Virus record (IMG/VR): IMGVR_UViG_3300032331_003609 | Span: 180,851 to 244,850 of that record | Direction: 5' to 3' (one strand) | Length of the DNA stretch: 64,000 bases | In this document: positions 1 through 58,583 of the stretch, piece after piece | How positions within the stretch are numbered: the first letter of the stretch is position 1 | How the letters are laid out: each line of letters begins with the position of its first letter | The notes under the pieces: model-generated | What the model was told of the DNA's origin: nothing | The model's database searches: none | What the model saw: only the letters and a program-made list of their open reading frames with translations | Made by a program: the position numbers and the translations under genes

Positions 1-618
1 CCTAGTTATGGCCACGGAACAGAAAAGCAATGCCCGGAAACAGAAGATGAATTAAAAGAGATAGCATTTGGATCTTCCAACAAAATAGAATGGGTGACAG
101 TAGATGCTGGTAATGAAGGAAATCACCGGGCATTAGCATTTACCAATGCATCTGAATATGATATCATGCTAACTCTAGATACCGATGAGGTTTGGGAGTC
201 TACTTCTTTAGAAAGATGTATTCAAGAAGCATATGACGGAGAAGCATGGAGAAGAAATATTTCCGGATTTATTCATTTTTGGAAATCTTTCAATTGGGCA
301 TGTCAAGATGGTTTTGAGCCTGCTAGAATTTTTAATCTAAAAAGAAAAAATAATTTAGAGGTTCCAATTAACGGTACAATCTATCATTTTGGGTATGCTC
401 AATCTAAAAAAATAATGGATTACAAGTTTGATATTCACGGACACAAGAATGAACTTAAAGAAGGATGGTTAGAAAATACATACTATGGATGGGAACCTGG
501 AAAACTAGATCTTCATCCAACATGTGGGGTTTGGCCAGAAGCTAAACTGTTTGATAAAAACACACTCCCTGATATTTTAAAATCACATCCAAATTTTGAT
601 AAAGAAATAATTTCATGA
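1..618 (+). CDS. Glycosyltransferase family 2-like protein (5'-truncated by window edge)
   Basis: Frame 1 is open from base 1, so the GTG at 94 is internal. LTLDTDEVW gives a DxDE metal-binding motif, and an IYHFGY motif follows. First gene of the sugar cluster. Confidence 0.7.
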   Translation, partial: PSYGHGTEKQCPETEDELKEIAFGSSNKIEWVTVDAGNEGNHRALAFTNASEYDIMLTLDTDEVWESTSLERCIQEAYDGEAWRRNISGFIHFWKSFNWACQDGFEPARIFNLKRKNNLEVPINGTIYHFGYAQSKKIMDYKFDIHGHKNELKEGWLENTYYGWEPGKLDLHPTCGVWPEAKLFDKNTLPDILKSHPNFDKEIIS

Positions 619-1550
619 GAAAAAAGCTTTTATACATTCCTTTAGATTATTGTAGACATGCTGAGAGTGATTCAATATTTAACTCCATGTTATCTGGATT
701 TAATACCCAATTTGAAGCTCGTGTTTTTAAAAATATGGAGGAATCTATTTTATTTAATCCGGACCTTGTTTATATGCACGGTAATGCCATTTCGATTGAA
801 GAATGTCATTTGCTTAAAAAATCAACTAATGCTTTTTTTACCATATGGGTAGGTGACGTTAGATATGCACCTTTACCCGAGGCAATGAGCATGATTGATG
901 TTGCAAATCTCTATTTATTTCCATTTAAAGGAGAACAATTAAAATCTTTTTCCCGAATCCTTAATACACCTTGTGAATATCTTTTTGAGGTATTTGATGA
1001 TAGGCAGATTAGAGATGTAAAGGAGATATCTTCTGGAAGAATAGTATTTGTTGGCAATGTTTATGAGCATTTTCCAGGGGGTGAAGAAAGAATATCTCTC
1101 GTAAAATTTATTGGGAAACATGCTCCTGAATTAGAGTATTATGGATCATTCCCATATGAGAGTAATTCAGCAAAAGGGGGAATAGATTTCTCAAATGTTC
1201 CAGACTTATATAATTCATCATATTTAACTATTGCACATAATAATAGAAATGATATAGATGGGTATTTTACTCACCGTAACTTAATAGCGCTAGCATCAGG
1301 CTCATGTGTATTGATGAAATATTTTCCTGGTATAGAGGAATTCTTTATTAATTGGGAGCATTGCGTTTATTATAAAACAAATTATGAATTATTGGATGTA
1401 ATTGAATTTTTAAAAAGAAACCCAGACATAAGAAATAAAATTGCTAAAAGCGGAAATACATATGTTAGGGAAAATTATCTAAATGCTAATTTTGCCTATA
1501 AGTATAATGAAATTTTAAATAAAATAAAAAAGCTAAATCATGAAAGATAA
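615..1550 (+). CDS. Glycosyltransferase, CgeB/Glyco_trans_1_2-like (GT-B)
   Basis: Motifs IVFVGNVY, LYNSSYLTIAHN, HRNLIALASGSCVLMKYFPGIEEFF, EHCVYY and RNKIAKSG...VRENY match the CgeB-like C-terminal domain. Confidence 0.8.
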   Translation: MRKKLLYIPLDYCRHAESDSIFNSMLSGFNTQFEARVFKNMEESILFNPDLVYMHGNAISIEECHLLKKSTNAFFTIWVGDVRYAPLPEAMSMIDVANLYLFPFKGEQLKSFSRILNTPCEYLFEVFDDRQIRDVKEISSGRIVFVGNVYEHFPGGEERISLVKFIGKHAPELEYYGSFPYESNSAKGGIDFSNVPDLYNSSYLTIAHNNRNDIDGYFTHRNLIALASGSCVLMKYFPGIEEFFINWEHCVYYKTNYELLDVIEFLKRNPDIRNKIAKSGNTYVRENYLNANFAYKYNEILNKIKKLNHER

Positions 1551-2067
1551 AATAAAAAAATATTCTCTCCATTGGGCTTTAGGTGGAAATGATGCGAACG
1601 GAGGACTGGAACAAAATGCTTATGAACTTGAAAAGCTTTGTGAATTTATAAAGGAAAAAAATATTAAAACCTACACAGAGATAGGGTGTGCTGCTGGACA
1701 GCTCCTAAGATTTATGAGGGATGAATTTGAACTTGATACAACGGGAATTACTTTAGAACCAAGGGATACTCATAAAGATCTACCCATAATACACGGAAGT
1801 TCCAGAGATCCTGAAATAATAAAAACTGCAAAGCCGTGTGATCTTTATTTCATAGACGGAGATCATTCTTATTTAGGAGTTAAATCTGATTATTTGAATT
1901 ATAAAGGTCTTTGTAAATACATGGCATTTCACGACATATTAGGGCAAAGAGACTGTGAAGGGGTTTCCCAATTTTGGAATGAAATAAGAAATGAATATGA
2001 ATTTATAGAATTTATAGATCCTAATAGGGATATAGCTAGTGGAATCGGAATTATTAAAATAATATAA
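1540..2067 (+). CDS. Class I SAM-dependent methyltransferase (Methyltransf_24-like)
   Basis: Motifs YTEIGCAAG, DLYFIDGDHSYLGVKSDY and MAFHDI. Confidence 0.85.
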   Translation: MKDKIKKYSLHWALGGNDANGGLEQNAYELEKLCEFIKEKNIKTYTEIGCAAGQLLRFMRDEFELDTTGITLEPRDTHKDLPIIHGSSRDPEIIKTAKPCDLYFIDGDHSYLGVKSDYLNYKGLCKYMAFHDILGQRDCEGVSQFWNEIRNEYEFIEFIDPNRDIASGIGIIKII

Positions 2068-2069
2068 AA

Positions 2070-3104
2070 ATGGAAACTGTAATTATAACCGGATCCTGTG
2101 GATTAATTGGAAGTGAAGCTGTTAAATTCTTTCATACACAAGGATTTAAAATAATTGGAATTGATGATGATTCTCGAGCTAAATTTTTTGGAAAAGAAGC
2201 AAGTACAAATGGGATGCTTTCTCAATTAAAAGAACTTAAAAATTACCAGCATCTTTCAATTAATATTTCATCTTATCAAGATCTACAGACTAGTTTATCC
2301 AGCATTAAAGATTTAAAGATGATTATTCATACAGCTGCTCAACCTTCTCATGATTGGGCAGCAACAAATCCGTTTGCAGATTTTAATGCAAATGCACTTG
2401 GTACCTTAAACATGCTAGAAATAACAAGAAATTATTTTCCAGAGGTAGTTTTTATCTTTACTTCTACTAATAAAGTTTATGGAGATTTACCTAATACTAT
2501 AACAGAATACACAGAATCTAATTCTAGATTTAATCCGGTTAATTCTGATTTTATAGAAAAAGGAATTAACGAAAACCTATCAATAGATCAATGTAAGCAT
2601 TCTTTATTTGGTGTATCAAAAGCTTACGGGGATTTAATAACACAGGAATATGGAAAATACTTTGGATTAAAAACTGGCACATTCAGAGGTGGATGCTTAA
2701 CTGGACAAAATCATTCAGGTGTTAAGGCTCATGGATTTTTATCTTATCTAGTAAAATGTGCAATGACAGGAGAAAAATATTACATTAATGGATACAAAGG
2801 AAAACAAGTTAGAGATAACATACACTCTAGTGATGTTGTCTCCGCCTTTTATGAATTTTATAAAAATCCTAATCCCGGTGAAGTCTATAATATAGGAGGA
2901 GGAAATCTTTCAAACTGCTCAATTCTAGAAGCTATTGAATTAATTCATGAAATATCAGGTAAAAGAGTAGACTATGAATTACTTGAAACACCAAGAGAAG
3001 GCGACCATATTTGGTATATTAGTGATATGACAAAATTTAGAAATGATTATCCAAATTGGATTCAAAAATATGACCTAAGAAAAATAATAAAAGAAATGAT
3101 ATGA
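2070..3104 (+). CDS. rfbE: NAD-dependent epimerase/dehydratase, CDP-paratose 2-epimerase (CDP-tyvelose epimerase)-like
   Basis: ITGSCGLIG Rossmann motif, HTAAQPSHD, FTSTNKVYG, SLFGVSK, FRGGCLTG, GKQVRDNIH and GDHIWYISD are typical of the RfbE subfamily. Confidence 0.85.
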   Translation: METVIITGSCGLIGSEAVKFFHTQGFKIIGIDDDSRAKFFGKEASTNGMLSQLKELKNYQHLSINISSYQDLQTSLSSIKDLKMIIHTAAQPSHDWAATNPFADFNANALGTLNMLEITRNYFPEVVFIFTSTNKVYGDLPNTITEYTESNSRFNPVNSDFIEKGINENLSIDQCKHSLFGVSKAYGDLITQEYGKYFGLKTGTFRGGCLTGQNHSGVKAHGFLSYLVKCAMTGEKYYINGYKGKQVRDNIHSSDVVSAFYEFYKNPNPGEVYNIGGGNLSNCSILEAIELIHEISGKRVDYELLETPREGDHIWYISDMTKFRNDYPNWIQKYDLRKIIKEMI

Positions 3105-3730
3105 TTAGTATAGTTTTTCCCCACGCTATGAACAAAGAGAATGATGCGGTTCTCCAATTGAAATTAAAAATGTTAGAAGAGAATTCCACTTACCCCTATG
3201 AGGTTATGGTTTTATCCAACACAGGAAGACCTGATTTAGTTTATGAATCATGGGATTGGATGATGAGAAGAGCTAAATATGACCTGGTTCTATGGGATAA
3301 TTCAGATATAACATATGCTCCAAAATTCATGGATAATATTATCAAACACAAAGATGATGCAGATTGGTTAGGACTCGAATTAATTGAATGTGGAGCCATA
3401 GGAGTGGCTGCAACCAACATCCATCAAGATTTTGGAAGAACAGCAAATTCTTTCAATAGATCAGAATTTGAAAAATGGGTGGAAGAATATTCTAAAGATC
3501 GCCCATCAATAAGAGAAGGATTTTGCTGGTACTCTCCTTCAGTTTGGAAGAAAGAATGGTACATTAAAATAGGTGGTTTTAACTTCTCAAAGCCATTTCC
3601 TCACCCGAATGATTCTGAGTTTAGAGAGAAGTGTATAGCAGCAGGATCAACATTTGCTGTTGTTAATTCTTTTGCATATCATTTTCAAAGAGCAGGAGAA
3701 AATAGGGGAGAAAAACCAGAAAGAGAATAA
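3101..3730 (+). CDS. Glycosyltransferase family 2-like protein
   Basis: AKYDLVLWDNSDITYAPKF, GGF...D.EF and AYHFQ follow the GT-A pattern. Confidence 0.65.
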   Translation: MISIVFPHAMNKENDAVLQLKLKMLEENSTYPYEVMVLSNTGRPDLVYESWDWMMRRAKYDLVLWDNSDITYAPKFMDNIIKHKDDADWLGLELIECGAIGVAATNIHQDFGRTANSFNRSEFEKWVEEYSKDRPSIREGFCWYSPSVWKKEWYIKIGGFNFSKPFPHPNDSEFREKCIAAGSTFAVVNSFAYHFQRAGENRGEKPERE

Positions 3731-3740
3731 TCAATGATAT

Positions 3741-4676
3741 ATGAAAAAAAATATTGCAATATTTGGATCAACAGGATTAGTTGGTTCTAACATTCTTAAA
3801 AAAATAGACACCGAAAAATATAAGGTTTATGCTCCTTCGAGAAAGGAGCTAGATCTTTTCGATCAGGAAAAGGTCCTAGATTGGTTCTTTGAAAATAAAA
3901 TGGAATATGTAATCATTGCAGCTGCTAGGGTTGGAGGAATAGTTGCTAATTCAACATACCCTACAGAATTCTTGCATGAGAATCTCACAATCCAAAATAA
4001 TATTATAATGTCTGCTTTAAAGAGCGATGTCAAAAATCTTATATTTCTAGGATCTTCTTGCATTTATCCGAGAGAATGCCCACAACCAATTAAGGAAGAA
4101 TATCTACTAACTGGTCCTTTAGAGAAGACAAATAAATCCTATGCCTTGGCAAAGATTGCTGGTATTCAATTATGTGATTCGATCAAAGAACAATACGGAA
4201 ATAATTACTATTCTTTAATGCCGTGTAATCTTTATGGTCCGGGTGATAATTTTGATCTAGAAGCTTCCCATGTTATTCCGGGAATGATTAGAAAAATTGA
4301 AAGCGCTAGAGACAACAATCAACCAACGCTTAAACTACTCGGAACAGGAAGACCCCTTAGAGAATTTCTTTATGTGGAAGATCTAGCAGAAGCTGTAATA
4401 TTCATGTTAGAAAACTATAACGGAAAAGATGGTTTAATTAACGTTGGAAGCGGTTCTGAAATCACGATAAAAGATCTAGCAAATATAATTTCACGTGTCA
4501 TAGGATATAAAGGTGAAATTCTTTTTGATACTGAGGGATTAGACGGAACACCCAGAAAGGTAATGGACAATTCTAAAATAGAATCGCTTGGATGGAAACC
4601 CCAAATGACATTAGAAACAGGAATAACCGAAACAGTAAAATGGTATTGGGACAATAAGGATAAAATTAGAAAATGA
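3741..4676 (+). CDS. fcl: GDP-L-fucose synthase
   Basis: GSTGLVG, AAARVGGIVAN, FLGSSCIYP, YALAK, MPCNLYGPGDNF, SHVIPG, GTGRPLREFLYVEDLA and DGTPRK. Confidence 0.96.
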   Translation: MKKNIAIFGSTGLVGSNILKKIDTEKYKVYAPSRKELDLFDQEKVLDWFFENKMEYVIIAAARVGGIVANSTYPTEFLHENLTIQNNIIMSALKSDVKNLIFLGSSCIYPRECPQPIKEEYLLTGPLEKTNKSYALAKIAGIQLCDSIKEQYGNNYYSLMPCNLYGPGDNFDLEASHVIPGMIRKIESARDNNQPTLKLLGTGRPLREFLYVEDLAEAVIFMLENYNGKDGLINVGSGSEITIKDLANIISRVIGYKGEILFDTEGLDGTPRKVMDNSKIESLGWKPQMTLETGITETVKWYWDNKDKIRK

Positions 4677-5680
4677 AAATAGCATTAATAACAGGAGTAA
4701 ATGGACAGGATGGGTCATATTTAGCAGAGTTGCTTCTTGACAAGGGATATATGGTTCATGGAACAATTAGAAGGTCTTCTTCTTTTAACTCGGGAAGAAT
4801 AGAACACTTTAGAGAGCATTCAAATTTCAAGAGACACTATATGGATCTAACTGATCCAGGAAGTGTATCCCACGTAATTTCTGAATTAAAGCCTGACGAG
4901 ATTTATAATTTAGCTGCTCAGAGCCATGTAAAAATTTCTTTTGAAATTCCAAACTATACCGGACAGGTAGATGCTATGGGTACATTAAATGTTCTGGAAG
5001 CAATTCGTGTTCATTCACCAAATTCTAAATTATACCAAGCATCAACCTCCGAGCTTTATGGAAAAGTTCAGGAAACACCTCAGACTGAAACGACCCCATT
5101 CTATCCAAGATCTCCATACGGAGTTGCAAAACTATATGGATATTGGATTGTTAAAAACTACAGGGAGTCTTATAATCTATTTGCATGTAACGGAATTCTT
5201 TTTAATCACACCTCTCCGAGAAGAGGTGAAAACTTTGTTGAGAAGAAAATTATAGATTCCCTATGTCAAATTAAAAAAGGAAAGACAGATATACTAACTC
5301 TTGGAAATCTTTCTGCTAGAAGGGATATAGGACACGCAAAAGAATACGTTGAAGGTATGTGGAGAATGCTTCAATTAGAATCCCCCGAAGATTTCGTACT
5401 AGCAACAGGCAAGACTCACTCTATTAAAGAAATGGTTGATATGGTTTGTCAAAAATTAGATATTGATATAGATTGGAAGGGCGGGGGTGAAAGAGAAATT
5501 GCAATTGATAAATCCTCTGGAGGAATTATTATAGGAATAGATCCTAAGTATTATAGACCAGCTGAAGTAGAGCTTTTACAAGGTGATTCAGCTAAAGCTA
5601 AAAAAGTATTAGGATGGGAACCAAAACTATCTCTGTCAGAAATATTTGATGAGATGATAGCAGAATCACTAAAGGATTAG
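4673..5680 (+). CDS. gmd: GDP-mannose 4,6-dehydratase
   Basis: ALITGVNGQDGSYLAE, NLAAQSHV, YQASTSELYG, FYPRSPYGVAKLY, NGILFNH, RDIGHAKEYV and YYRPAEVELL. Confidence 0.97.
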   Translation: MKIALITGVNGQDGSYLAELLLDKGYMVHGTIRRSSSFNSGRIEHFREHSNFKRHYMDLTDPGSVSHVISELKPDEIYNLAAQSHVKISFEIPNYTGQVDAMGTLNVLEAIRVHSPNSKLYQASTSELYGKVQETPQTETTPFYPRSPYGVAKLYGYWIVKNYRESYNLFACNGILFNHTSPRRGENFVEKKIIDSLCQIKKGKTDILTLGNLSARRDIGHAKEYVEGMWRMLQLESPEDFVLATGKTHSIKEMVDMVCQKLDIDIDWKGGGEREIAIDKSSGGIIIGIDPKYYRPAEVELLQGDSAKAKKVLGWEPKLSLSEIFDEMIAESLKD

Positions 5681-8313: not shown

Positions 8314-8322
8314 AATATATAA
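8314..8322 (+). promoter_or_regulatory. Putative late promoter AATATATAA
   Basis: Recurring motif, 21 nt upstream of the first tail-module gene (8344). Confidence 0.6.
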
Positions 8323-46889: not shown

Positions 46890-49088
46890 ATGCCGAAAAT
46901 AAACATATTAAATATTCTTGCTGGGGATCAACAAGCAATACTTGTAGACAAAGTAAACTACAATTTTGACCAGATTTTAACAGCGGGCGGCGGACCACAG
47001 GGACCTCAGGGCATTAGAGGTGCTACCGGACCTATAGGGCCGCAAGGAATACAGGGTCCAACCGGACCACAGGGATTAAAAGGATCAAGATGGTATGTTC
47101 AGGTAACCGCTCCAACATCTGAAAATATTTTTCATACACCCTGGGGAGAGCCTGAACTTGGAGATTATTGGTTAGCAGGAGCAGATGATGCTAATCCATA
47201 TGGAATTTATGTTTATAATGAAACTGTACCAGGAGCTTTAAATTGGGAGTACTCTGGAGTTTTCTTTGCTAATACATCAGCATTTACCCCGGTAGATGAC
47301 ATAAATCAGACGGATGAAAGAGCTTTAATACACGATACATTATTCAGTAATAGGTATTCTTTAGTCCTAAGTGATTACGGAGTTACCGGGTCAGAAACAG
47401 GATTTAAATATAGGGATTTTAATAAATTTGGAATTAATGGGGAAAGATCTAAGCTTAAAATAGCTACTGATTTTAATTCACCATTTTTATCCCTTTTATC
47501 TTTTGGTAGAGCAAACTTAGATGACGGAAATAGAGCAAACACAGCATATAGTTTAAATAGAAATCCTAGATTTAGATGGAAGAATTTAACAGGCAGTGAT
47601 TATCATATAGAATTCTTTTCTCCAACGGGTGATTATTATGTAAGCACTCCTAAATTTGTTATAGGGGGAACTTCTTCTAATTTTTCAGTAACAGGTTATA
47701 ATGCTACCGGCGACATGTTCCGCCTTACAACAAGTTCAACAGCTGCTGTAAATCCTAGCAAATATTTTTTTGGGTTTGACTCCGCTGGATATGTAACAAA
47801 AGGATTACCGTACAATCCAACAATAAGTGCAGGTATTCTTTCCTCTGATGCAAATAATTTAGATTATTACGAAGAGGGGGATTTAAAAGGAATACTTCAA
47901 TTAAAAACCTATTGCAATACTACAGAATGGAACGGAACGCCTGATTCTACATATAATAATGTAAAGGCAAGATATACGAGAATTGGTAATTTGGTTCATG
48001 TTGATTTTACAATTAAAATAGCAGGACTAGGAGCTACAGTTCCTCAGTATTTAGACAATGGTGGTACCTTATTTATTAAAGGATTTCCCTACGACCCTGA
48101 TTTCTCTGCCATTAAAGCAGGAGAAGACACTACAAGTATCACAAGACCAGCAATGCCTGTGATACCTATTAAGGCATCCATAGGAAATTCAACATTGAGG
48201 GATTATTCTGGTGCATTTGTTTATTACACAAATACAGGGGAATCAAGATTTATTCTTTATAATAATTCGGGGGGTTTATTTGATGTTAGTAGTTTACCTA
48301 CAGCAGCATCTTATTTATATGGAAGTTTCAGCTACACAACACAAAGTGCTACTAGAATTAGCACTATAGTTACACCTGCTGGATATTGTACAGGAACTTT
48401 ACCTGCACCAACACCAGCACCAACGCCAGCACCAACGCCAGCACCGACCCCAGCTCCTGATTACGATTTTGCTTGGGATTATGCTAATTATGTTGCAGGA
48501 CCAACACCAGCTCCAACACCTGCGCCTACGCCAGCTCCGACGCCAGCACCAACGCCAGCACCAACACCTGCGCCTACGCCAGCACCAACACCTGCGCCTA
48601 CGCCAGCACCAACACCTGCGCCTACGCCAGCACCAACACCTGCGCCTACGCCAGCACCAACGCCAGCACCAGCAAGCTGTAACATAAGTAATCCTAGCTA
48701 TGTGACAGTTAATACACCTACTGCTTATGGAACGATTTACATCTCAACGGATAGAAATATTACTTTATCAGCATTTGGGGGAGCAGCATTTGGAAGCCAT
48801 ACTAGCGCTAATATTAGCGTAACTGGATATAATGGAACAGCTACACCGTATCCAAGTTCTGCATATGTTTATGCAGGAAGTTATATTACTGCGGCTAACG
48901 ATCTTGCATTACCTGCTGGTTACTACAATTTCTACCTAACAAGTAGCTACCAAGGAAGTAATGGAAATAACGCTGGAATATCTTGTGGTACTGTCATAAC
49001 ATATACGCCAACACCTAGTCCAACTCCTAGCCCAGGAACTAGCGGAGGCGGCGGTGGAGGTGGAGGCGGAATGTCAGGAATAGGATAG
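46890..49088 (+). CDS. Tail fibre-like protein with collagen repeat, PAPT repeats and C-terminal poly-Gly
   Basis: N-terminal anchor, about 10 Gly-X-Y triplets, the LDYYEEG fibre motif, PAPT tracts and a terminal SG8MSGIG. Confidence 0.75.
46992..47081 (+). repeat. Collagen-like Gly-X-Y repeat (about 10 triplets)
   Basis: [30 protein letters not shown]. Confidence 0.9.
48402..48673 (+). repeat. PAPT tetrapeptide tandem repeats in two blocks (48402-48458 and 48501-48673)
   Basis: 12-nt period, with four exact 24-nt units ccagcaccaacacctgcgcctacg at 48555-48650. Confidence 0.95.
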
Positions 49089-49111
49089 AATTAAACTAAT
49101 AAATTAAAAAC

Positions 49112-49744
49112 ATGGATAGAGAGATAATATCGGGTGAAGATTTTTTATATCAAAGAGGGACAATTTCAACAGTCTACTCTTGGTATAGACCATCTTATGA
49201 CTATGTTAAAGATTATTTACAATACCTGAAAGACGAGACAACTGTTTTTGATGAATTTGAAATTTATTTAGCAGGAGGTATACTATACGATTTTGATAGC
49301 ACATGGGACGTTGATATATTTCTAGTAGGTGGTTTGGAAAGCGATGCAAAGATAGAAGAGCAATTAAATCTTATGACAGACATTGCATTGAATAAATTTT
49401 TCATGCTAGTAGATATAGCATGGATGGAAAGAAGACCTTCGAATATTACTTATTCGCAAATGGAAGAAAATAATTTTCTTCAAGAGGATATAGCATATAA
49501 AAAGATAGGGCATTTTAAAAAGAAAATGGGGACAGAATCCTGGGAATACAATATGAAAGATAATCCTGGTGTTGAACCTTTGAGCGAATACTTAATTAAA
49601 AGCAGTTTTGGTGGATTCAAACACACTGACAAAATGATAGACAAGGTTAGGAATCATCCTAAGCAAAATGTGATAACCACATTTAGTGCGGAAGAATTTC
49701 TATTGAATGATAGAAATTATTTTTTAAGTAATACTAATAGATAA
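49112..49744 (+). CDS. Pol-beta superfamily nucleotidyltransferase-like protein
   Basis: [21 protein letters not shown] fits hG[GS]x(9-13)DhDh, and a third Asp lies in MLVDIAW. Confidence 0.7.
49736..49744 (+). promoter_or_regulatory. Putative late promoter variant AATAGATAA
   Basis: Motif variant overlapping the NTase stop, 8 nt upstream of 49753. Confidence 0.4.
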
Positions 49745-49752
49745 GATATAAA

Positions 49753-51093
49753 ATGGCAAGTGTAAATATAAAATTCTCATCAGCAGGAAACGTTACGAGT
49801 CAATCGTATGAGATATCTGCAAGCGCAACAGAAAATGGGAGTTATAGTGTAATTAGTACTATATCAAGAGCAACACTTCTTGCCGGAACTTATATTACTG
49901 TTCCAGATGATTCTACGTGGATTAAAGGCGATAATGTTACAGTGGGAGCACCAGCTGGTATATCCCACAAAATACAAATATCGGGTCTTCCAGCACCAAC
50001 GCCAGCACCAACACCAGCACCAACACCTGCGCCTACGCCAGCTCCAACACCTGCGCCTACACCAGCACCAACACCAGCACCAACACCTGCTCCAACACCT
50101 GAGCCTACGCCAGCACCAACACCTGCTCCAACACCTGAGCCTACGCCAGCACCAACGCCAGCACCAACACCAGCACCAACACCAGCACCAACGCCAGCAC
50201 CAAATTACGGAGGAACAGTTTATGTAGTTAACACCAATTCGGGAACTGCAGCTGATGCTTGTAACGTATCTGGATTATACATTAGTTTAGGAGTTACTGG
50301 TAATGCAACAACGTTCTGTGCATCTACAATTTTCACGTCAACCACATGGCTATCACAGTTTACGAGCGAAAATTATTATATTTCTGATGCTACAGGGGGT
50401 TCAGGTTATATGACGGTTTATCATGCATCTGGTGATAATTTTGCAACAGTAACCAGCGGAGGTTGTACAGCATGCCCAGGAGCACCAACACCTGCACCAA
50501 CGCCAGCACCAACACCTGCACCAACGCCAGCACCAACACCAACACCAGGTCCTAGTGGCGGAGGCGGAGGAGGCGGATGTCTAGTCTATGGAACACTGAT
50601 TAGTATGGCAGACGGATCATACAAACCTGTTGAAGAAATAGTAATAGGCGATCTTATTAAAACTGTATCAATAGACGGATTGGATAGCAGCGACGAAGAT
50701 GCATGGAAGGTATACACATCTACATCATTCTCTTCAACCCCTATGATATCTACAGTAATGGCTATAATGGATGATAATTGGATCGAATACTATACGATTA
50801 ATGAATCTTTAAATATCACATTTGAACACCCTGTATTTGTTAAGAGAGACATTGATTATCTATTTACTAGAGTAGTTGATCTAATGCTAGGAGACTTTAT
50901 CCTAGATGAGACCGGAAATTGGGTAGAAGTAACCACGATAGATAAAATAGAATTAAACGTTCAAACCATTAATATAAACGTTGAAGATAGCGATCTTTAT
51001 TTCGCTAATGGATTACTAGTTCACAATCTAAATAACGTAGATAAATCTCCTTCAGGGGGAGCGGGAGGAGGACAACCCCCATTTAATCTATAA
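49753..51093 (+). CDS. PAPT-repeat virion protein with poly-Gly linker and C-terminal Hint (intein-like) domain
   Basis: Hint spans 50578-51027. It has N1 [25 protein letters not shown], block B TFEHP and C-terminal [15 protein letters not shown]. The +1 residue is Leu. Confidence 0.88.
49990..50202 (+). repeat. PAPT/PEPT tandem repeats (about 18 units); a shorter block follows at about 50481-50546
   Basis: 12-nt period. Contains the same 24-nt unit as the upstream gene, at 50014-50037. Confidence 0.95.
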
Positions 51094-51096
51094 TAT

Positions 51097-51384
51097 ATGA
51101 AGTTAACAAAAACTGAAATATCACAGATAGGATCGATAATGAATAGTTATCGATCCATCCATGAAAGCCTAAATTTTTACGAAAAGAATTTGGTCCTAAT
51201 GGAGAAAGGAAATATAGAAAAATCCGGGGATGAAATAACATCTCTTGGAATAAAAATAAAAGATAGCATATCAAAACTCCAACAGGAACGAGCTAAGGAA
51301 AAAGATTTCTTTGGTTTTCTAGAACAGAAATACGGACCTGGACAATTTGATACAGAAACTTTTGAATATAAAACAACAAAATGA
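51097..51384 (+). CDS. Hypothetical coiled-coil protein
   Basis: 95-aa ORF with a helical pattern; overlaps the next gene by ATGA. Confidence 0.6.
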   Translation: MKLTKTEISQIGSIMNSYRSIHESLNFYEKNLVLMEKGNIEKSGDEITSLGIKIKDSISKLQQERAKEKDFFGFLEQKYGPGQFDTETFEYKTTK

Positions 51385-52124
51385 AACAAGTAGAAAAACA
51401 GGTAGAAGTTGTAAGGGAGTTTAAAAACAATAATAAGAAGTTACTTATAGTAGCAGGACTTATAATATTGGCATTTTTAATCTACGGAACATTTAACAAC
51501 AGCTACCATGCTAAAGAGATAAAAGCACTTGAAACTGAGATTGGTGTGGTTCAAAAAAAGTTTGATGCAGCAATAGAGGAAAAAGAAAAATTAAAGGATT
51601 CTTCTTTAATCTATGAAACAATGGCTGAACAAGCAGGTGCTGAGGCCGACGTATTTAGAACAAAAGCAGAAAAGGAAAAAAAGGCTAAGGAACTGGCATT
51701 ATCAGCGTTGCAAAATTTACCTAAAGATGTAATTGATACATTCTTTGTTAAAAGGTATGTAGATGTTCCTAAATCGGATATTGGATTAGAATTGGACAAG
51801 AATGTCGGAAATGCAATAGTGATAGAATTGGTTGAAAAAGATCATTTAGTTGGTCAATTAGCAACACAAGAGAACCTAACAACCACCCTTACCACACAGG
51901 TAAACACCCTACAAACTTCATTAGGTTTCTCTAAATTGGCTCTTGTTAGTGCAGATTCAGCAATTGTAGCTAGATCAAAGCAATTTGAATTACAACAACA
52001 AGTAAGTGACTTATTAAAGCAAGACTTAAAAACGGCTAAGAAAAAAGCTTTTTGGAACAAACTTAAAGGAACTGCAGTAGGTATTGTTGTAGGCTTTACC
52101 GTTGGTATTATTGCAGTAAAGTAA
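51381..52124 (+). CDS. Membrane-anchored coiled-coil protein (spanin-like candidate)
   Basis: N-terminal TM segment KLLIVAGLIILAFLIYGTF, a long coiled coil, and a C-terminal hydrophobic GTAVGIVVGFTVGIIAV. Confidence 0.5.
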   Translation: MKQVEKQVEVVREFKNNNKKLLIVAGLIILAFLIYGTFNNSYHAKEIKALETEIGVVQKKFDAAIEEKEKLKDSSLIYETMAEQAGAEADVFRTKAEKEKKAKELALSALQNLPKDVIDTFFVKRYVDVPKSDIGLELDKNVGNAIVIELVEKDHLVGQLATQENLTTTLTTQVNTLQTSLGFSKLALVSADSAIVARSKQFELQQQVSDLLKQDLKTAKKKAFWNKLKGTAVGIVVGFTVGIIAVK

Positions 52125-52160
52125 TTCTTAATCGTGATATTATCTCTCTCTAAAAAACTT

Positions 52161-52169
52161 GATATATAA
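52161..52169 (+). promoter_or_regulatory. Putative late promoter GATATATAA
   Basis: Exact motif, 5 nt upstream of 52175. Confidence 0.6.
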
Positions 52170-52174
52170 GGGAT

Positions 52175-54598
52175 ATGTCAAGCTTCACCTATACCAGTAA
52201 ATTTTTCAGTCTTGCTCCATATTTACTTATGGAGTACAGATATGGTACACAGCCTAATCCTGAGAATCATTCAGTGTTATATGGCCTTAATGCCATCGGT
52301 TTTGAAAAGATGTCCAATGGATATTTCAATGGGACAGTGCAAATTACCAATAGAAATCAAGACACTGAAGCAACTGGTAATGTAAGAGATAGAAGTTCTG
52401 TACAAACATCACAAAACACGTTTGTTAGATTAGATATTGATCGTTTAGAACAATATCTGGATTATGACGACAAGCTAACAGATATTAGCAATCTTCCTAT
52501 TGTATTTGAAAACAATATTAATGTCTATTATGACACCGTAAGATACCACTTTTTAAGTGGATATAATTTCGGAACAAAGGATGGCGCTATCATGCAAATC
52601 CAATTTCAGGAAAGAAACGGTAAGAAAGCTACTATTTCTCAAATAACATATGAGAAGGGGGATATAAATATTACAACACCTAACCCTAGTCCAATTTATT
52701 TTAATGCTGGAATATATGATCATTTTATAGAAGTTAAGATTCCTTCTTATGCTTCTATTACATATGACTATGACACCCAAGCAGTAAATGGATTAGCTGA
52801 TCAAACTATTGCATCTAAGATTAGTTCCGATGGACAAGGATTTATAAGAAATCAACCATTTAATATTTCTCTTTATGAGATAGAATCCACACAAAGTATT
52901 AATGGGTTTTACTATTATCAAACTGCTTTAAATACGATAGCAACAATTACTCCTTCCGATGAGTATGCAGATCTTGCAGGTGTTATAACTGAAAATACAG
53001 ATTTTGATTATTTTGAATATTATCCTTCTTGGCAAGGAAATTTTATAGAGGATTTCATTTATGCTGAAAGCTCTTTAGGAAACATCTATTATATTATTCA
53101 TGACATTGAACTAATGGAACAAATAGGTCTAAGAAGAGTTTCCACCCAAAAGATTCAATTGCTTCAAGATAAAGATTTTAATGGTCCTTATCTTTACAGA
53201 CCTGTTGTTATGAATCCTAAGGCAACTAGCTTCTCAATTAATTATTCAATGAGACTAGTTAATAAGAATAGTAACGTTTCTATACTAAGAGTATCAACAG
53301 TAACAAGTACTGAGGTTGACAAATACGGACCAGGCGTTAAAAGAATAAATTTATTACATCAGCCATATCCACAAAAGGTTTACAATAAGGTAGTTGAGCC
53401 GGTTGTTTCTAAGGCATACACATTGAATGTAAATCCAATAGAAAGAGTTATTACTAAATATGTTCCAGCTTTCTTTGAGAGAGAAAATGTAAATATATCA
53501 GAAGAAGATTTAACCATAGACAATCTTGGGGGTTTAACACAATCAGCAACTGTTGATGCTTCAATAGCATTTGGACAAGGAAAATCTAAGATTGTAATTA
53601 ATCCTTATGATAACTATTATAAGTTTAGGGTTTTTGTAAAAAATGACGGGAAAGAAAATACCTTATTAGATCTTGGATCTAATTCAGATTTTTATTTAGT
53701 ATTTGAAGGTGGAGATAACAAAACAGTAAAAATATCTAGTTTAATAAATAGCACATTCCAGAATCCTAGTAAAGGAGAATTGGTATTTAGAGTTGTTGAA
53801 TCAGATTCTAAAAAAGTAACAGCATTTATGGAAAGAGATTTTCATATAGTTGCAAGAACTAATAATGGAATAGAAACATCGATCTATCATGGATATTGGA
53901 TTTTACCTAGTGAAAGAGATCAGAAGCCTGTTGCGGTAACCCCGGCAACACCAGCTCCTATGCCTGCACCTGTAGTGATTTCACCAGTTCAAGCAACAGC
54001 AGCACCTGCGCCAATGCAAGTTGCAACCCCAACAGCAACGCCTGTTCCTGCTGCTATAGAAACACCTGCACCAACACCTTCTACACCAACGGTTGATATA
54101 ATACCGCAACAGCCTAAAGAATACTTTGACATTAAAACTGATCCTGTGATACTAAATGTTGAACCGGCAGTTATGACAAAAGTAGTTGTTGAAGAACCAG
54201 TTATTGTTAAGAAGATACCTATTAAGGCAGACATTGACACGCTAGCAAACCTAATCAAGATGGATGAAAATGCGGGTAAATCGGTTCCTGAAGTTTGTGA
54301 TTACTATACGGTTCCTGGAAATCCTGGAAATCTTCTTTATGAAGGTATCACAGTCAGATTCTTTTTAAATGCTGTTAGATTAGTCCATCCAGATACATTC
54401 GGTAGAAGAAGCGATGAATTTGCAATGTATGCAAATTACCTAGGTGAAATTTACAATCCATATGAGAATCAGAAATATCCATCAGGTGGTGGAGGTGGAG
54501 CTGGTGGTGGGTATATTGGAGGCGGGGGAGTAGGGTACAACATCTACGACAAGATACAAGACAAAAGTGAAACGATGGGTCAAACCTTCTTTCTATAA
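52175..54598 (+). CDS. Putative virion structural protein with Pro/Ala/Thr-rich linker and Gly-rich tail
   Basis: 807 aa with a beta-rich N-terminus, a TPATPAPMPAP...PAPTPSTP linker and a C-terminal PSGGGGGAGGGYIGGGG. Confidence 0.6.
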   Translation: MSSFTYTSKFFSLAPYLLMEYRYGTQPNPENHSVLYGLNAIGFEKMSNGYFNGTVQITNRNQDTEATGNVRDRSSVQTSQNTFVRLDIDRLEQYLDYDDKLTDISNLPIVFENNINVYYDTVRYHFLSGYNFGTKDGAIMQIQFQERNGKKATISQITYEKGDINITTPNPSPIYFNAGIYDHFIEVKIPSYASITYDYDTQAVNGLADQTIASKISSDGQGFIRNQPFNISLYEIESTQSINGFYYYQTALNTIATITPSDEYADLAGVITENTDFDYFEYYPSWQGNFIEDFIYAESSLGNIYYIIHDIELMEQIGLRRVSTQKIQLLQDKDFNGPYLYRPVVMNPKATSFSINYSMRLVNKNSNVSILRVSTVTSTEVDKYGPGVKRINLLHQPYPQKVYNKVVEPVVSKAYTLNVNPIERVITKYVPAFFERENVNISEEDLTIDNLGGLTQSATVDASIAFGQGKSKIVINPYDNYYKFRVFVKNDGKENTLLDLGSNSDFYLVFEGGDNKTVKISSLINSTFQNPSKGELVFRVVESDSKKVTAFMERDFHIVARTNNGIETSIYHGYWILPSERDQKPVAVTPATPAPMPAPVVISPVQATAAPAPMQVATPTATPVPAAIETPAPTPSTPTVDIIPQQPKEYFDIKTDPVILNVEPAVMTKVVVEEPVIVKKIPIKADIDTLANLIKMDENAGKSVPEVCDYYTVPGNPGNLLYEGITVRFFLNAVRLVHPDTFGRRSDEFAMYANYLGEIYNPYENQKYPSGGGGGAGGGYIGGGGVGYNIYDKIQDKSETMGQTFFL

Positions 54599-54608
54599 TC
54601 AATAGACT

Positions 54609-55160
54609 ATGTTATTAAACTCCAGGCAGAATGGTTTTATATTTAATTTTCCAAAGGGATTTTTCTCTAAAGCTTTGGAAACTAAGTATCATGCGTATGT
54701 GAAGAGAATGCCAATACCTTATGACAATCTAAAAGATTTCATGAATTCAACAATTCAACAGGTTTCATTTCCAACATTCCAATCTATAGATCATGTTGAA
54801 CAAACAAGACCTGGTGGATATAGACAGAACTACAAGAGTGCAACTAATATACAAAATCTTATTAGAAGAGATTTTAATGTCACATTTAAATTAGGGGAAG
54901 GACTTATTAACTATTGGATCATGTATGAAAGCATGATTAATTTCTTAGACTTTAATAATGCAGAGCAGGTTCTTCCTGATCTAACACTTAGATTATTAGA
55001 TCATGAAGGGGTTATTATGTCAACTATTGAATTTCAACAACCGATATATACATCATTATCGGAGACCCAATTAAACTATTCTAGCACGACTCCTCAGTTT
55101 TCCACTTTCAGTGTGGGCTTCCGCTGTAATTACGTAAACATAAAATTAGAAATTGGCTAA
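54609..55160 (+). CDS. gp3: Tail tube terminator/tail completion protein, T4 gp3-like
   Basis: IQQVSFP, FNVTFKLGEGLINY, DLTLRLLD...IEF...TSLSETQL and FSTFSVGF follow the gp3/gp19 tube-fold pattern. Confidence 0.7.
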   Translation: MLLNSRQNGFIFNFPKGFFSKALETKYHAYVKRMPIPYDNLKDFMNSTIQQVSFPTFQSIDHVEQTRPGGYRQNYKSATNIQNLIRRDFNVTFKLGEGLINYWIMYESMINFLDFNNAEQVLPDLTLRLLDHEGVIMSTIEFQQPIYTSLSETQLNYSSTTPQFSTFSVGFRCNYVNIKLEIG

Positions 55161-55821
55161 ACGAATTCTCGGAGTGGATTTCAGTTTAAATTCCCCGGCT
55201 TGGTGCTTATTAGCAGAGGGTGAATCTAAATGGGGATCTTTTCACCGCACAACAAAGAAGATAGTACCGATGATGACCAAAGAGGCATCACCGTTCAAGG
55301 TATTCTCAGAAATACCAAATTTCTCTCTGAAGATCATTGAGAAGGAAAGAGCTGACGGTGAATATTGGGAAGTAGAGAGAAAAAAGATTGAAAACTTCCT
55401 TGTGATAGCTGATTCCTTTATAGAAATGGTCAAACCCCATATAGACGATCAGACTGTAGTTTTTATGGAGGGTATATCATTTGGCAGCTCTGGAAATTCC
55501 CTAATAGATATTTCTATGTGTACTGCCCTTATTAGGGAAAGACTAGTAAATATAGTAGGCTTTGGGAGATTAAACATCTATTCCCCGACAGCTATTAAAA
55601 AATTTGCATGCAAAGGAAATGCAAAAAAAGACGAACTTTATCAAGCGCTTTTAGATAAATACAGTGAGGACAACCTTCTAAGTCCTCTTATCAGACCGCT
55701 GAAACAAAATCAGGATCTATGGATAAAAAAAAGCAAGGAAGTAGAAACACCTTGTTCAGATATTATAGATGCTACTTGGATTAGCCTTTATGGTAAACAA
55801 ATTTTAGGGGAAACTTTTTGA
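55153..55821 (+). CDS. RuvC-like Holliday junction resolvase
   Basis: ILGVDFSLNSPAW, VFMEGISFGS, YSPTAIKK...GNAKKDEL and DIIDATWI carry the RNase H-fold catalytic residues. Confidence 0.8.
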   Translation: MAKRILGVDFSLNSPAWCLLAEGESKWGSFHRTTKKIVPMMTKEASPFKVFSEIPNFSLKIIEKERADGEYWEVERKKIENFLVIADSFIEMVKPHIDDQTVVFMEGISFGSSGNSLIDISMCTALIRERLVNIVGFGRLNIYSPTAIKKFACKGNAKKDELYQALLDKYSEDNLLSPLIRPLKQNQDLWIKKSKEVETPCSDIIDATWISLYGKQILGETF

Positions 55822-55879
55822 ACAACTTAGGGTATAACTTAGGAATCAATTTTAGTTAATTTAAAAAAATTTAGAAAAC

Positions 55880-56860: not shown

Positions 56861-56880
56861 GATAATAAATATGAGATTTT

Positions 56881-58572: not shown

Positions 58573-58583
58573 GAAAAATTTGA

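What the first reader, a model, noticed from the sequence alone, without database searches (positions are those of the whole stretch)
48402..54150. Thr-rich mucin-like PAPT stalks as probable substrates of the phage's own glycosylation cluster
Seen: three late genes (46890, 49753, 52175) carry Pro/Ala/Thr linkers totalling dozens of Thr, and the same window encodes GTs and GDP-fucose synthesis. Known: Pro/Thr-rich linkers are typical O-glycosylation sites, and virion glycosylation is documented in some mycobacteriophages and giant viruses. Inference: a glycosylated, mucin-like virion coat that may provide protease shielding, stiffening or host-surface mimicry.
Basis: inference. Interest (0 to 1): 0.6.

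Follow-up and report, generated by a model that had tools for sequence, protein, structure and literature searches.

The report
Pro-Thr stalks in phage tail fibres
Three tail-fibre or baseplate proteins of a freshwater jumbo phage carry real Pro-Ala-Thr repeat linkers, and the phage has a large fucose-sugar operon that is probably expressed late, but nothing in the sequence shows that the sugars go onto these linkers.

Summary
ORF1 (46890-49088), ORF2 (49753-51093) and ORF3 (52175-54598) hold 246 linker residues with 54 Thr. In ORF1 and ORF2 they are encoded by 12/24-nt tandem repeats.

It is an 11-gene operon of soluble enzymes that starts 3.4 kb upstream of the window: Gmd, Fcl, a GT10 fucosyltransferase, further GT-like proteins and a weak methyltransferase match. 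It sits between head and baseplate genes. It follows the same promoter-like motif (RATATATAR) as the sheath, head protease and ORF3 genes.

The substrate link is untested.
- In close relatives the linkers keep their position but change unit (PAPT, PT, PAPPT, PSPT) and length.
- They sit exactly at the seams where distal modules are swapped.
- Six Gmd-carrying viruses outside the clade have no such repeats.
- One PAPT-bearing contig has no Gmd-type gene.
- One relative keeps a PT linker but lacks Gmd/Fcl at the syntenic site.

Best reading: the linkers are extended spacers and module seams in tail fibres. Glycosylation is possible (about 0.25-0.3) but not shown.

The parts
46890..49088 (+). ORF1, 732 aa: collagen-like tail fibre. 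It has a conserved N-terminal part, two PAPT arrays, a variable distal beta-sandwich tip, a TPTPSP segment and a poly-Gly tail.
   Evidence: ORF. The GXY region hits PHROG tail-fibre families. Orthologues in L005-L012 carry an extra insert that I recognise by eye as a tail-collar-like motif, not confirmed by any tool. AF2 model.
46992..47090 (+). Collagen-like GXY run in ORF1 (11 triplets, aa 35-67).
   Evidence: Nearly invariant in all nine orthologues.
48402..48458 (+). ORF1 PAPT array a (19 aa, 4 Thr).
48492..48674 (+). ORF1 PAPT array b (61 aa, 14 Thr). It contains exact 24-nt higher-order units.
   Evidence: Contigs break here and indels are seen in other runs.
48675..49004 (+). ORF1 distal tip module (aa 596-705), bracketed by Cys residues. 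Predicted 7-strand beta sandwich.
   Evidence: pLDDT 61-78 over aa 611-702. Only 55-59% identical to relatives whose N-terminal part is 79-82% identical.
49005..49085 (+). ORF1 C-terminal [10 protein letters not shown] segment followed by a G9 tail.
   Evidence: A 15-nt in-frame insertion is seen at 49034 in another run.
49112..49744 (+). ORFx, 210 aa: possible minimal nucleotidyltransferase-fold protein between ORF1 and ORF2. Its role is unknown.
   Evidence: No Pfam or PHROG hit. The Atlas feature search points to NTP_transf_2-like clusters, a lead only. Found only in relatives that also have ORF2.
49753..51093 (+). ORF2, 446 aa: an N-terminal module, a PAPT array, a swappable middle module, a second PAPT array, G7, a Hint domain and a 21-aa tail.
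49990..50202 (+). ORF2 PAPT/PEPT array (71 aa, 17 Thr).
   Evidence: A 9-nt deletion and a 15-nt insertion are seen in another run.
50203..50475 (+). ORF2 middle module (aa 151-241). It is replaced by an unrelated module in close relatives.
   Evidence: 14% identity where the flanking modules are 86-93% identical.
50476..50556 (+). ORF2 second PAPT array (27 aa, 6 Thr).
50578..51027 (+). Hint / bacterial-intein-like domain of ORF2. Cys276 follows G7, TFEH lies at aa 356-359, and HN at aa 424-425 is followed by Leu.
   Evidence: Pfam PT-HINT and Intein_splicing match below their cut-offs. PDB BIL domain 2lwy aligns block B and the C-terminal VHN. tblastn hits genes annotated as virion structural proteins in Erwinia jumbo phages.
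52161..52169 (+). Promoter-like motif GATATATAA, 6 nt before the ORF3 start.
   Evidence: The motif class is 33-fold enriched upstream of genes and mapped. It is conserved 14 nt before ORF3 in all relatives.
52175..54598 (+). ORF3, 807 aa: conserved structural protein with a 582-aa N-terminal domain, a P/A/T/V linker and a 167-aa C-terminal domain that includes a Gly-rich stretch.
   Evidence: The homologue in Flavobacterium phage MaF61 lies between annotated baseplate genes.
53921..54094 (+). ORF3 linker (58 aa, 10 Thr). It is 43-62 aa in close relatives and 17-18 aa in more distant ones.
1..5680 (+). Window part of the 11-gene sugar operon, which starts at G000 177490, 3.4 kb upstream of the window. 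Genes in the window: end of a weak GT2-like protein (1-618), GT-B Glyco_trans_1_2 (615-1550), methyltransferase-like (1540-2067), CDP-tyvelose-2-epimerase-like SDR (2070-3104), a 209-aa protein that looks GT-A-like by eye (3101-3730), Fcl (3741-4676) and Gmd (4673-5680).

Best explanation
The PAPT runs are extended, low-complexity interdomain spacers ('stalks') in three tail-fibre or baseplate-periphery proteins of a freshwater jumbo phage. The host is probably a Bacteroidota bacterium.

In ORF1 and ORF2 the runs arise and change length by slippage of 12/24-nt tandem repeats. The linkers hold small, Cys-bracketed, fast-evolving modules, most likely receptor-binding tips, away from conserved shaft or anchor domains. 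In ORF1 and ORF2 they also mark the seams at which those modules are exchanged between related phages. ORF2 additionally ends in a Hint domain placed directly after a G7 run. This domain most likely cuts itself off and releases the 275-residue stalk protein.

Shown by sequence and comparison:
- the repeats and their conserved positions;
- unit and length variation among relatives;
- module swapping at the seams;
- predicted disorder of the linkers, with a folded tip in ORF1.

Inferred:
- the spacer and reach function;
- receptor binding by the tips;
- Hint self-cleavage.

Whether the Thr residues carry sugars is left open. The phage's sugar operon, probably late, could decorate these or other virion parts.
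For: - Arrays and composition.
- Same position but a different unit in relatives: PAPT in L003/L004, (PT)n in L005 and L008-L011, PSPTPTP in L006/L007, PAPPT in P0001. L012 has only a 13-residue remnant, so the fibre tolerates its loss.
- The ORF3 linker ranges from 17 to 62 aa, and in L004 it is mostly PA rather than PT.
- In-frame indels of 3, 9 and 15 nt occur inside the arrays in other lake metagenomes.
- The ORF2 middle module is 14% identical where the flanks are 86-93% identical. The ORF1 tip is 55-59% identical against 79-82% for the shaft.
- AF2 predicts disordered linkers and a beta-sandwich tip with pLDDT 61-78. Foldseek hits to reovirus and adenovirus fibre knobs are weak.
- Fibre identity: collagen GXY region with PHROG tail-fibre hits, and baseplate neighbours of the ORF3 homologue.
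- PAPT-type linkers occur in thousands of unrelated proteins from all domains of life and in more than 118 viral contigs. They are therefore a generic linker class.
- Hint motifs.
Against: - A plain spacer does not need Thr, yet every ORF1 and ORF2 variant keeps a hydroxyl residue after Pro ([25 protein letters not shown]). That fits selection for an O-glycosylation site as well as it fits the generic PT-linker class.
- The phage invests 11 genes, probably late, in glycan synthesis without any membrane component. This calls for an acceptor, and the linkers are an obvious candidate.
- The structure models are poor overall (pLDDT 35 and 43).
- No virion proteomics exist for this uncultured phage.
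Confidence: 0.6

Rival explanations
1. The linker Thr residues are O-glycosylated in the cytoplasm by the phage's own late sugar operon (GDP-fucose supply, GT10 fucosyltransferase, several GT-A/GT-B enzymes, possibly a methyltransferase). This would give stiff, protease-shielded, mucin-like stalks on the fibres.
For: - The operon has 11 genes, all without membrane segments, and no flippase, polymerase or priming transferase.
- It lies between the head genes and the baseplate/fibre genes. It is preceded by the RATATATAR motif that also precedes the sheath, head protease, collagen fibre and ORF3 genes. The motif is conserved there in relatives.
- A sugar operon is present in all 6 clade relatives whose contig covers the region.
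- A hydroxyl residue is retained in all ORF1 and ORF2 linker variants.
- Precedents: mycobacteriophage capsid glycosylation (PMC11256854, citing Freeman et al. 2023) and chlorovirus capsid glycans made with virus-encoded GMD/GMER and soluble GTs (PMC9614988).
Against: - No GT here matches a known polypeptide-O-glycosyltransferase family. GT10 enzymes fucosylate glycans, not peptides (established knowledge).
- Six Gmd-positive viruses outside the clade lack PxPT repeats.
- One PAPT-positive contig lacks a Gmd-type gene.
- G007 has a PS/PT linker but no Gmd/Fcl at the syntenic site.
- The ORF3 linker in L004 is largely PA with few Thr.
- L012 has almost no linker.
- Operon content differs even between the closest relatives that share the PAPT unit.
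Confidence: 0.27
2. The sugar operon has nothing to do with the linkers. It remodels a host glycan (LPS, capsule or the Bacteroidota O-glycan precursor) by adding fucose and other residues to host lipid-linked intermediates. Possible purposes are blocking superinfection or stopping progeny from sticking to debris.
For: - Soluble GTs without a priming transferase, flippase or polymerase are also what an add-on to a host pathway would look like.
- Similar Gmd-Fcl-fucosyltransferase/GT/methyltransferase cassettes sit among auxiliary metabolic genes (pstS, talC, tRNAs) in cyanophages S-SKS1, P-SSM2 and ACG-2014f. In the cyanophage literature, as I recall it, such genes are usually interpreted as cell-surface modification.
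- The mosaic content of the operon among close relatives resembles O-antigen loci.
Against: - The operon follows the promoter-like motif shared with structural genes and sits inside the structural region.
- Late expression in a lytic cycle leaves little time to export a changed surface polymer (inference).
Confidence: 0.3
3. The operon glycosylates virion parts other than the PAPT linkers. Candidates are the capsid or a decoration protein, or the second collagen-like fibre (G000 81123-83612), whose GTS/GSS triplets resemble the Thr-rich collagen-like region of the glycosylated Bacillus exosporium protein BclA.
For: - The late-type motif and position are as in the first rival.
- The 829-aa collagen-like fibre has about 60 GXY triplets rich in Ser/Thr and also follows the motif.
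- In known cases (mycobacteriophages, chloroviruses) the capsid is the target (PMC11256854, PMC9614988).
Against: No direct evidence either way. The PAPT linkers are at least as exposed and as Thr-rich.
Confidence: 0.15
4. The arrays are assembly artefacts, or non-coding repeats read through by chance.
For: Contigs of all four runs laid break inside the arrays. Unrelated organisms' contigs pile up on them.
Against: - The arrays keep the reading frame.
- They recur at the same positions in independent assemblies from other samples.
- They vary by multiples of 3 nt.
- They are flanked by conserved coding sequence.
Confidence: 0.02

Closest known systems
Pro-Thr 'PT-box' interdomain linkers of secreted bacterial glycoside hydrolases and carbohydrate-binding modules (for example the Cellulomonas fimi cellulases; cellulase linkers are reviewed in PMC3490864)
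   Same: Tandem PT or PxPT low-complexity runs of about 20-70 residues join independently folded modules. They are predicted to be extended or disordered and vary in length between homologues. The best PDB sequence match to the arrays is a (PT)n linker in a multi-module protein (8zvk).
   Different: Those proteins are secreted and, where glycosylated, are modified during or after export. Phage fibres fold in the cytoplasm, so glycosylation would need a cytoplasmic enzyme. Here the linkers also coincide with module-swap seams in virion proteins.
Virion glycosylation in cluster F mycobacteriophages (Che8; Freeman et al. 2023, as cited in PMC11256854)
   Same: Phage-encoded glycosyltransferases are proposed to decorate virion proteins.
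   Different: In those phages the glycans are reported on the major capsid protein of phages infecting an actinobacterial host, and they were shown by experiment. I could not read the primary paper. Here the host is probably a Gram-negative Bacteroidota bacterium, the proposed acceptors are fibre linkers, the operon is far larger and includes nucleotide-sugar synthesis, and nothing has been shown.
Chlorovirus PBCV-1 glycosylation machinery (A118R GMD, A295L GMER, A064R, A111/114R; PMC9614988)
   Same: Virus-encoded Gmd and Fcl/GMER, several soluble glycosyltransferases including a fucosyltransferase, and methyltransferase activity. PBCV-1 uses them to build glycans on a virion protein.
   Different: PBCV-1 makes N-linked glycans on the major capsid protein of a eukaryotic-algal virus. 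There is no sequence-level orthology beyond Gmd/Fcl, and no PT stalks are involved.
Gmd-Fcl-GT cassettes of large cyanophages (S-SKS1, P-SSM2, ACG-2014f)
   Same: Gmd (58-63% identical), Fcl, a fucosyltransferase or other GTs, and methyltransferases, arranged in one co-directional cassette in an aquatic phage above 200 kb.
   Different: In cyanophages the cassette lies among auxiliary metabolic genes. Those genomes have no PxPT repeats. Here the cassette lies inside the structural region, behind a motif shared with structural genes.
BclA, the collagen-like glycoprotein of the Bacillus anthracis exosporium nap (PMC10050317, PMC6222408)
   Same: A collagen-like filament protein of a particle assembled inside a cell. 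Its Thr-rich repeat region carries deoxyhexose-containing, methylated oligosaccharides.
   Different: BclA glycans sit on the collagen triplets themselves, not on PT linkers. It is a bacterial spore protein, not a phage protein. Details of BclA beyond the cited abstracts are from my own knowledge.
Bacterial intein-like (BIL) / pretoxin-HINT domains
   Same: The ORF2 C-terminal domain has Cys1, the TxxH block and the terminal HN. It aligns to the solved BIL domain 2lwy.
   Different: Scores are below the Pfam cut-offs. The residue after HN is Leu, so it cannot splice like an intein. Only 21 residues follow it, so it releases no toxin. It sits in a phage fibre-like protein.

Membership tests
PT-type interdomain linker | Tandem low-complexity Pro/Thr(-Ala/Glu/Ser) run | tested here: met
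   Five arrays in ORF1 and ORF2, about 49-50% Pro and 23% Thr. ORF3 carries a degenerate version.
PT-type interdomain linker | Joins independently folding modules and is itself unstructured or extended | tested here: met
   AF2 predicts disordered linkers and a folded tip with pLDDT 61-78. The modules on either side evolve and swap independently. The ORF2 model was too poor to add anything.
PT-type interdomain linker | Length and unit vary among homologues while the position is kept | tested here: met
Mucin-like O-glycosylated domain | Very high Ser/Thr density over long tandem repeats | tested here: inconclusive
   Thr is 17-23% of linker residues and Ser is almost absent. The arrays are 10-71 aa, which is short and Pro-dominated compared with mucin domains.
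Mucin-like O-glycosylated domain | Dense O-glycans actually attached | not testable with these tools
   Needs glycoproteomics or lectin blots. No isolate and no proteome data are available.
Phage or virus self-encoded virion glycosylation (Che8-type, PBCV-1-type) | Virus encodes glycosyltransferases and nucleotide-sugar enzymes | tested here: met
   Gmd 9e-139, Fcl 5e-124, GT10 4e-9, Glyco_trans_1_2 1e-14, and DUF5672 6e-20 (a family of unknown function that I take to be GT-like). There are further GT-A-like leads.
Phage or virus self-encoded virion glycosylation (Che8-type, PBCV-1-type) | Enzymes are cytoplasmic and independent of lipid carriers | tested here: inconclusive
   None of the 11 products has a hydrophobic segment (maximum KD19 below 1.3). 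However, peripheral GTs that act on host lipid-linked sugars would look the same.
Phage or virus self-encoded virion glycosylation (Che8-type, PBCV-1-type) | Expressed together with the structural genes | tested here: inconclusive
   The operon shares the RATATATAR motif with the sheath, protease, fibre and ORF3 genes, and the motif is conserved in relatives. No motif lies directly before the RuvC-like, gp32, 350-aa, UvsY or helicase genes at 55153-60125. No RNA run holds the phage.
Phage or virus self-encoded virion glycosylation (Che8-type, PBCV-1-type) | Glycans demonstrated on a virion protein | not testable with these tools
   Experimental only.
Hint / bacterial intein-like domain | N-terminal Cys/Ser nucleophile, TxxH block B, C-terminal His-Asn | tested here: met
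   Cys276, TFEH 356-359, HN 424-425. Blocks align to PDB 2lwy.
Hint / bacterial intein-like domain | Profile score above the curated threshold | tested here: not met
   PT-HINT scores 24.4 bits against a cut-off of 27.7. Intein_splicing scores 25.5 against 35.8. I call it Hint-like on the basis of its motifs and do not file it as a Pfam member.
Splicing intein | Cys/Ser/Thr at the +1 position after the terminal Asn | tested here: not met
   The +1 residue is Leu here and in L003, and Tyr in P0001. It is therefore a cleaving domain, not a splicing one.
Collagen-like phage tail fibre | Uninterrupted GXY triplets plus similarity to tail-fibre families | tested here: met
   11 triplets at aa 35-67. 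PHROG tail and tail-fibre hits from 1.7e-8.

The most novel reading that the evidence does not exclude
A clade of freshwater jumbo phages, probably infecting Bacteroidota, builds fucose-containing, possibly methylated, pyruvylated or acetylated O-glycans in the cytoplasm. It would do this with a late, rapidly diversifying operon of soluble glycosyltransferases, attaching the glycans to the Pro-Thr stalks (and perhaps the collagen-like regions) of its tail fibres. That would be the first mucin-like glycoprotein fibre in a phage of a Gram-negative host. The glycan cassette and the fibre tips would then diversify together.
Probability: 0.22. Interest if true: 0.8.

Novelty: new member of a known kind. 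Interest (0 to 1): 0.45.

Why it matters
Virion glycosylation has been demonstrated in very few phages. If it were proven here, it would extend the phenomenon to large aquatic phages and to fibre stalks. It would also give a function to the widespread 'LPS-like' Gmd/Fcl/GT cassettes of aquatic phages, which is a long-standing annotation puzzle.

Even without glycosylation, the locus is a clean natural example of how tandem-repeat linkers let tail-fibre tips be lengthened, shortened and swapped. It also shows a Hint self-cleaving domain used in a virion protein.

The sugar operon, with its probably late promoter and its mosaic content, is the more unusual feature. It deserves an experiment in its own right.

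Tried and rejected
- The whole-protein homologue search for ORF2 was swamped by low-complexity PAPT matches (1643 hits). Only two were true relatives.
- megablast of 18 kb against GenBank phages found nothing.
- The AF2 model of ORF2 from a 4-sequence alignment was unusable (pLDDT 35). The ORF1 model is usable only for the tip. Foldseek hits on it (reovirus and adenovirus fibre knobs, TM by target at most 0.54) are a lead, not evidence.
- Pfam, NCBIfam and PHROGs found nothing for the single modules of ORF1-3, for ORFx or for four operon proteins.
- The primary mycobacteriophage glycosylation paper is not held. PMC13033339 turned out to concern glycan binding, not glycosylation.
- The broad co-occurrence test was limited. 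Of five long PAPT-bearing viral contigs, only one could be searched as a whole record. Five clade relatives were too short to reach the operon.
- No RNA run holds the phage, so expression timing could not be checked.
- DNA glycosylation as the operon's role was considered. I gave it low weight from general knowledge (no known GDP-fucose-dependent DNA modification) and did not test it.
- A periplasmic Bacteroidota-type O-glycosylation of these proteins was rejected, because virion proteins assemble in the cytoplasm (established knowledge).

Full report
CONTEXT

The window is the last 64 kb of a single 244,850-bp viral contig (34% GC, CheckV completeness 86%). megablast finds no near relative in GenBank phages.

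The nearest named relative at protein level is Flavobacterium phage MaF61 from Finnish lake water. Several huge metagenomic phages (LR7565xx) are also distant relatives. Ten IMG/VR contigs and two other metagenomic contigs, one without retrievable DNA, carry syntenic copies of the region at 66-92% protein identity. Near-identical DNA occurs in freshwater and lake metagenomes from 12 studies. This is therefore a freshwater jumbo phage whose host is probably a Bacteroidota bacterium; the host assignment is an inference.

THE OBSERVATION

It is correct.
- ORF1 (46890-49088, 732 aa) has PAPT arrays at aa 505-523 and 535-595, plus [10 protein letters not shown] at aa 706-715.
- ORF2 (49753-51093, 446 aa) has arrays at aa 80-150 and 242-268.
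- ORF3 (52175-54598, 807 aa) has a degenerate P/A/T/V linker at aa 583-640.

Together these make 246 linker residues with 54 Thr and 5 Ser. The ORF1 and ORF2 arrays are 12/24-nt tandem repeats with 81-95% matches, and some 24-nt units are exact copies. Their GC content is 60-67% in a 34% GC genome. They cannot be due to chance, and independent assemblies carry them at the same places. Short-read contigs break inside them, so the copy numbers in the window are not secure.

WHAT THE THREE PROTEINS ARE

ORF1 is a tail fibre.
- It has 11 collagen-type GXY triplets that hit PHROG tail-fibre families.
- Its N-terminal part is conserved in all nine orthologues.
- More distant orthologues carry an extra insert that I recognise by eye as a tail-collar-like motif; no tool confirmed it.
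- Behind the PAPT arrays sits a Cys-bracketed module (aa 596-705). AF2 predicts it as a seven-strand beta sandwich with pLDDT 61-78, while the linkers are disordered.
- Weak Foldseek matches to reovirus and adenovirus fibre knobs fit a fibre but are only a lead.

ORF2 is modular.
- It runs as an 79-aa module, a PAPT array, a 91-aa module, a second PAPT array, G7, a 150-aa Hint-like domain and a 21-aa tail.
- The Hint-like domain has Cys276, TFEH at aa 356-359 and HN at aa 424-425, followed by Leu.
- It aligns to a solved bacterial intein-like domain and to genes annotated as virion structural proteins in Erwinia jumbo phages. Its Pfam scores are below the cut-offs.
- Because the +1 residue is not a nucleophile, it should cleave rather than splice (inference).

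ORF3 is a conserved structural protein.
- Its MaF61 homologue lies between annotated baseplate genes.
- The two domains on either side of its linker are each 91-93% identical in close relatives.

HOW THE LINKERS BEHAVE IN RELATIVES

Position is conserved, but unit and length are not.
- The unit is PAPT in the closest relatives, PAPPT in P0001, (PT)n in L005 and L008-L011, and PSPTPTP in L006/L007. L012 has almost no linker.
- The ORF3 linker is 17-18 aa in distant relatives and 43-62 aa in close ones. In L004 it is mostly PA.
- Other lake runs show in-frame indels of 3, 9 and 15 nt inside the arrays.

The arrays of ORF1 and ORF2 are also seams.
- The ORF2 middle module is 14% identical where its neighbours are 86-93% identical.
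- L004 has replaced the Hint domain as well.
- The ORF1 tip is 55-59% identical against 79-82% for the shaft.

PAPT-type runs are generic. The ORF2 search pulled in over 1,600 unrelated proteins from all domains of life. A PAPTx4 coding pattern hit more than 118 viral contigs, including giant-virus bins. Contigs of unrelated organisms also pile up on the arrays.

THE SUGAR CLUSTER

It consists of eleven tightly packed + strand genes running from G000 177490 to window 5680:
- a 376-aa protein with a GT-A nucleotide-sugar-transferase-like N-domain (Atlas lead; 81 unnamed homologues);
- a GT10 fucosyltransferase;
- a 212-aa protein that looks GT-A-like by eye;
- DUF5672;
- a weak GT2-like protein;
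- a Glyco_trans_1_2 GT-B enzyme;
- a weak methyltransferase match;
- an SDR closest to CDP-tyvelose 2-epimerase;
- a 209-aa protein that looks GT-A-like by eye;
- Fcl and Gmd.

None of them has a membrane segment. No other convincing GT was found in the genome with GT1 and GT2 profiles.

The operon lies between the head genes (protease at G000 161872) and the baseplate/fibre genes.

A motif, RATATATAR, lies 4-30 nt before many start codons and is 33-fold enriched in upstream intergenic DNA.
- It precedes the tail sheath, a head-closure-like gene, the head protease, a collagen fibre, ORF3 and the first gene of the sugar operon.
- No copy lies directly before the RuvC-like, gp32, 350-aa, UvsY or helicase genes at 55153-60125.
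- It is conserved before the operon and before ORF3 in relatives.

Late co-expression with virion genes is therefore likely, but it is inferred.

The operon is mosaic. Relatives substitute pyruvyl transferases, FkbM methyltransferases, a hexapeptide acyltransferase, GT17 and a GT31/Fringe-like enzyme. The closest relative differs in four genes.

IS THE OPERON LINKED TO THE LINKERS?

Within the clade:
- All five relatives whose contig reaches far enough have Gmd.
- A sixth, G007, has a sugar operon but no Gmd/Fcl next to the DUF5824 gene. Its ORF1 nevertheless keeps a PS/PT linker.
- The other four relative contigs were too short to test.

This is one lineage, so the co-occurrence counts once.

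Outside the clade:
- MaF61 has neither feature.
- LR756501, LR756508, S-SKS1, P-SSM2, ACG-2014f and Sulfolobus filamentous virus 1 have Gmd but no PxPTPxPTP coding repeat. The own genome has 30.
- A 200-kb PAPT-bearing contig has no Gmd-family gene.
- Gmd occurs in 89 of 50,697 phage records, mostly cyanophages. In the three I inspected, the cassette sits among auxiliary metabolic genes.

The two features are therefore not generally coupled. No GT here belongs to a family known to start O-glycans on peptides, and acceptor choice cannot be read from sequence.

VERDICT

The best-supported mechanism is the ordinary one. These are slippage-generated, extended PT spacers that tether and exchange distal modules on tail fibres (confidence about 0.6).

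I put it at about 0.27. Competing acceptors are host surface glycans (0.3) or other virion parts (0.15), such as the Ser/Thr-rich collagen-like fibre at G000 81123-83612.

Known analogues for how it would work are chlorovirus capsid glycosylation (PMC9614988), mycobacteriophage capsid glycosylation (PMC11256854, citing Freeman et al. 2023) and the glycosylated collagen-like BclA of Bacillus spores (PMC10050317).

Noticed in passing
window 50578-51027 (ORF2 aa 276-425): A Hint / bacterial-intein-like self-cleaving domain with intact Cys1, TxxH and HN motifs sits directly after a G7 run, and only 21 residues follow it. Homologous domains occur in genes annotated as virion structural proteins in Erwinia jumbo phages. 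In relative L004 a different C-terminal module replaces it.
   Followed up: partly
G000 177490-186530 (L002:16640 to window 5680) and loci L154-L158: The sugar operon is mosaic among close relatives. Gmd, Fcl, GT10 and the first gene are mostly kept. The rest is exchanged for pyruvyl transferases, FkbM methyltransferases, a hexapeptide acyltransferase, GT17 or a GT31/Fringe-like enzyme. G007 lacks Gmd/Fcl at the syntenic place.
   Followed up: partly
whole genome; in the window at 8314, 23288, 52161, 60134 and 63584: A promoter-like motif RATATATAR lies 4-30 nt before start codons and is 33-fold enriched in upstream intergenic DNA. It precedes the sheath, head protease, collagen fibre, ORF3 and sugar operon genes. 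No copy lies directly before the RuvC-like, gp32, 350-aa, UvsY or helicase genes at 55153-60125.
   Followed up: partly
window 49112-49744: A 210-aa ORF between ORF1 and ORF2 has a GG...DVD motif. Atlas feature hits point to minimal nucleotidyltransferase (NTP_transf_2) clusters. It is present only in relatives that also carry ORF2.
   Followed up: partly
C-termini of ORF1 (49035-49085), ORF2 (51028-51090) and ORF3 (about 54480-54595): All three PT-bearing proteins, and their orthologues, end with a Pro/Ser segment followed by a poly-Gly run and a short tail that in ORF2, ORF3 and the ORF1 orthologues contains an aromatic residue. This could be a shared docking or processing signal.
   Followed up: no
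G000 81123-83612 (locus L019), outside the window: A second collagen-like tail fibre of 829 aa has about 650 aa of GXY triplets. They include a long GTS/GSS stretch that resembles Ser/Thr-rich collagen-like glycoproteins, so this is another candidate glycan acceptor.
   Followed up: partly
G000 87460-89067 (L028) and 126600-128327 (L029), outside the window: Two further proteins carry short PT-type linkers (PSPSPTPGPTP before a Cys-rich tail; PTPEPTPEPTPP). This makes five PT-bearing proteins in the genome.
   Followed up: no
window 51381-52124: A 247-aa protein has N- and C-terminal hydrophobic segments and a coiled-coil middle, with a weak Rz-like spanin hit. It is conserved between ORF2 and ORF3 in relatives.
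   Followed up: no
L002:9894-12811 (G000 170744-173661): An asparagine-synthase-like gene and a RimK-type ATP-grasp ligase lie just upstream of the sugar operon and are conserved in relatives. They may serve peptide or amino-acid ligation chemistry.
   Followed up: no
window 48374-48632, 50019-50163 and about 50510-50670: Contigs of all four metagenome runs laid break at the arrays. Summed contig depth rises up to hundreds-fold or more at 50065-50215 and 50518-50668, because contigs of unrelated organisms match the PAPT and poly-Gly coding DNA.
   Followed up: yes
window 55153-60125: A T4-like recombination and replication set lies directly downstream of the structural block: a RuvC-like resolvase, gp32-type SSB, a UvsY-like protein and a DEAD/ResIII helicase.
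   Followed up: no
window 14079-14267: A 69-nt tandem repeat (2.7 copies, 65% matches) lies inside the 730-aa ORF at 12342-14534.
   Followed up: no
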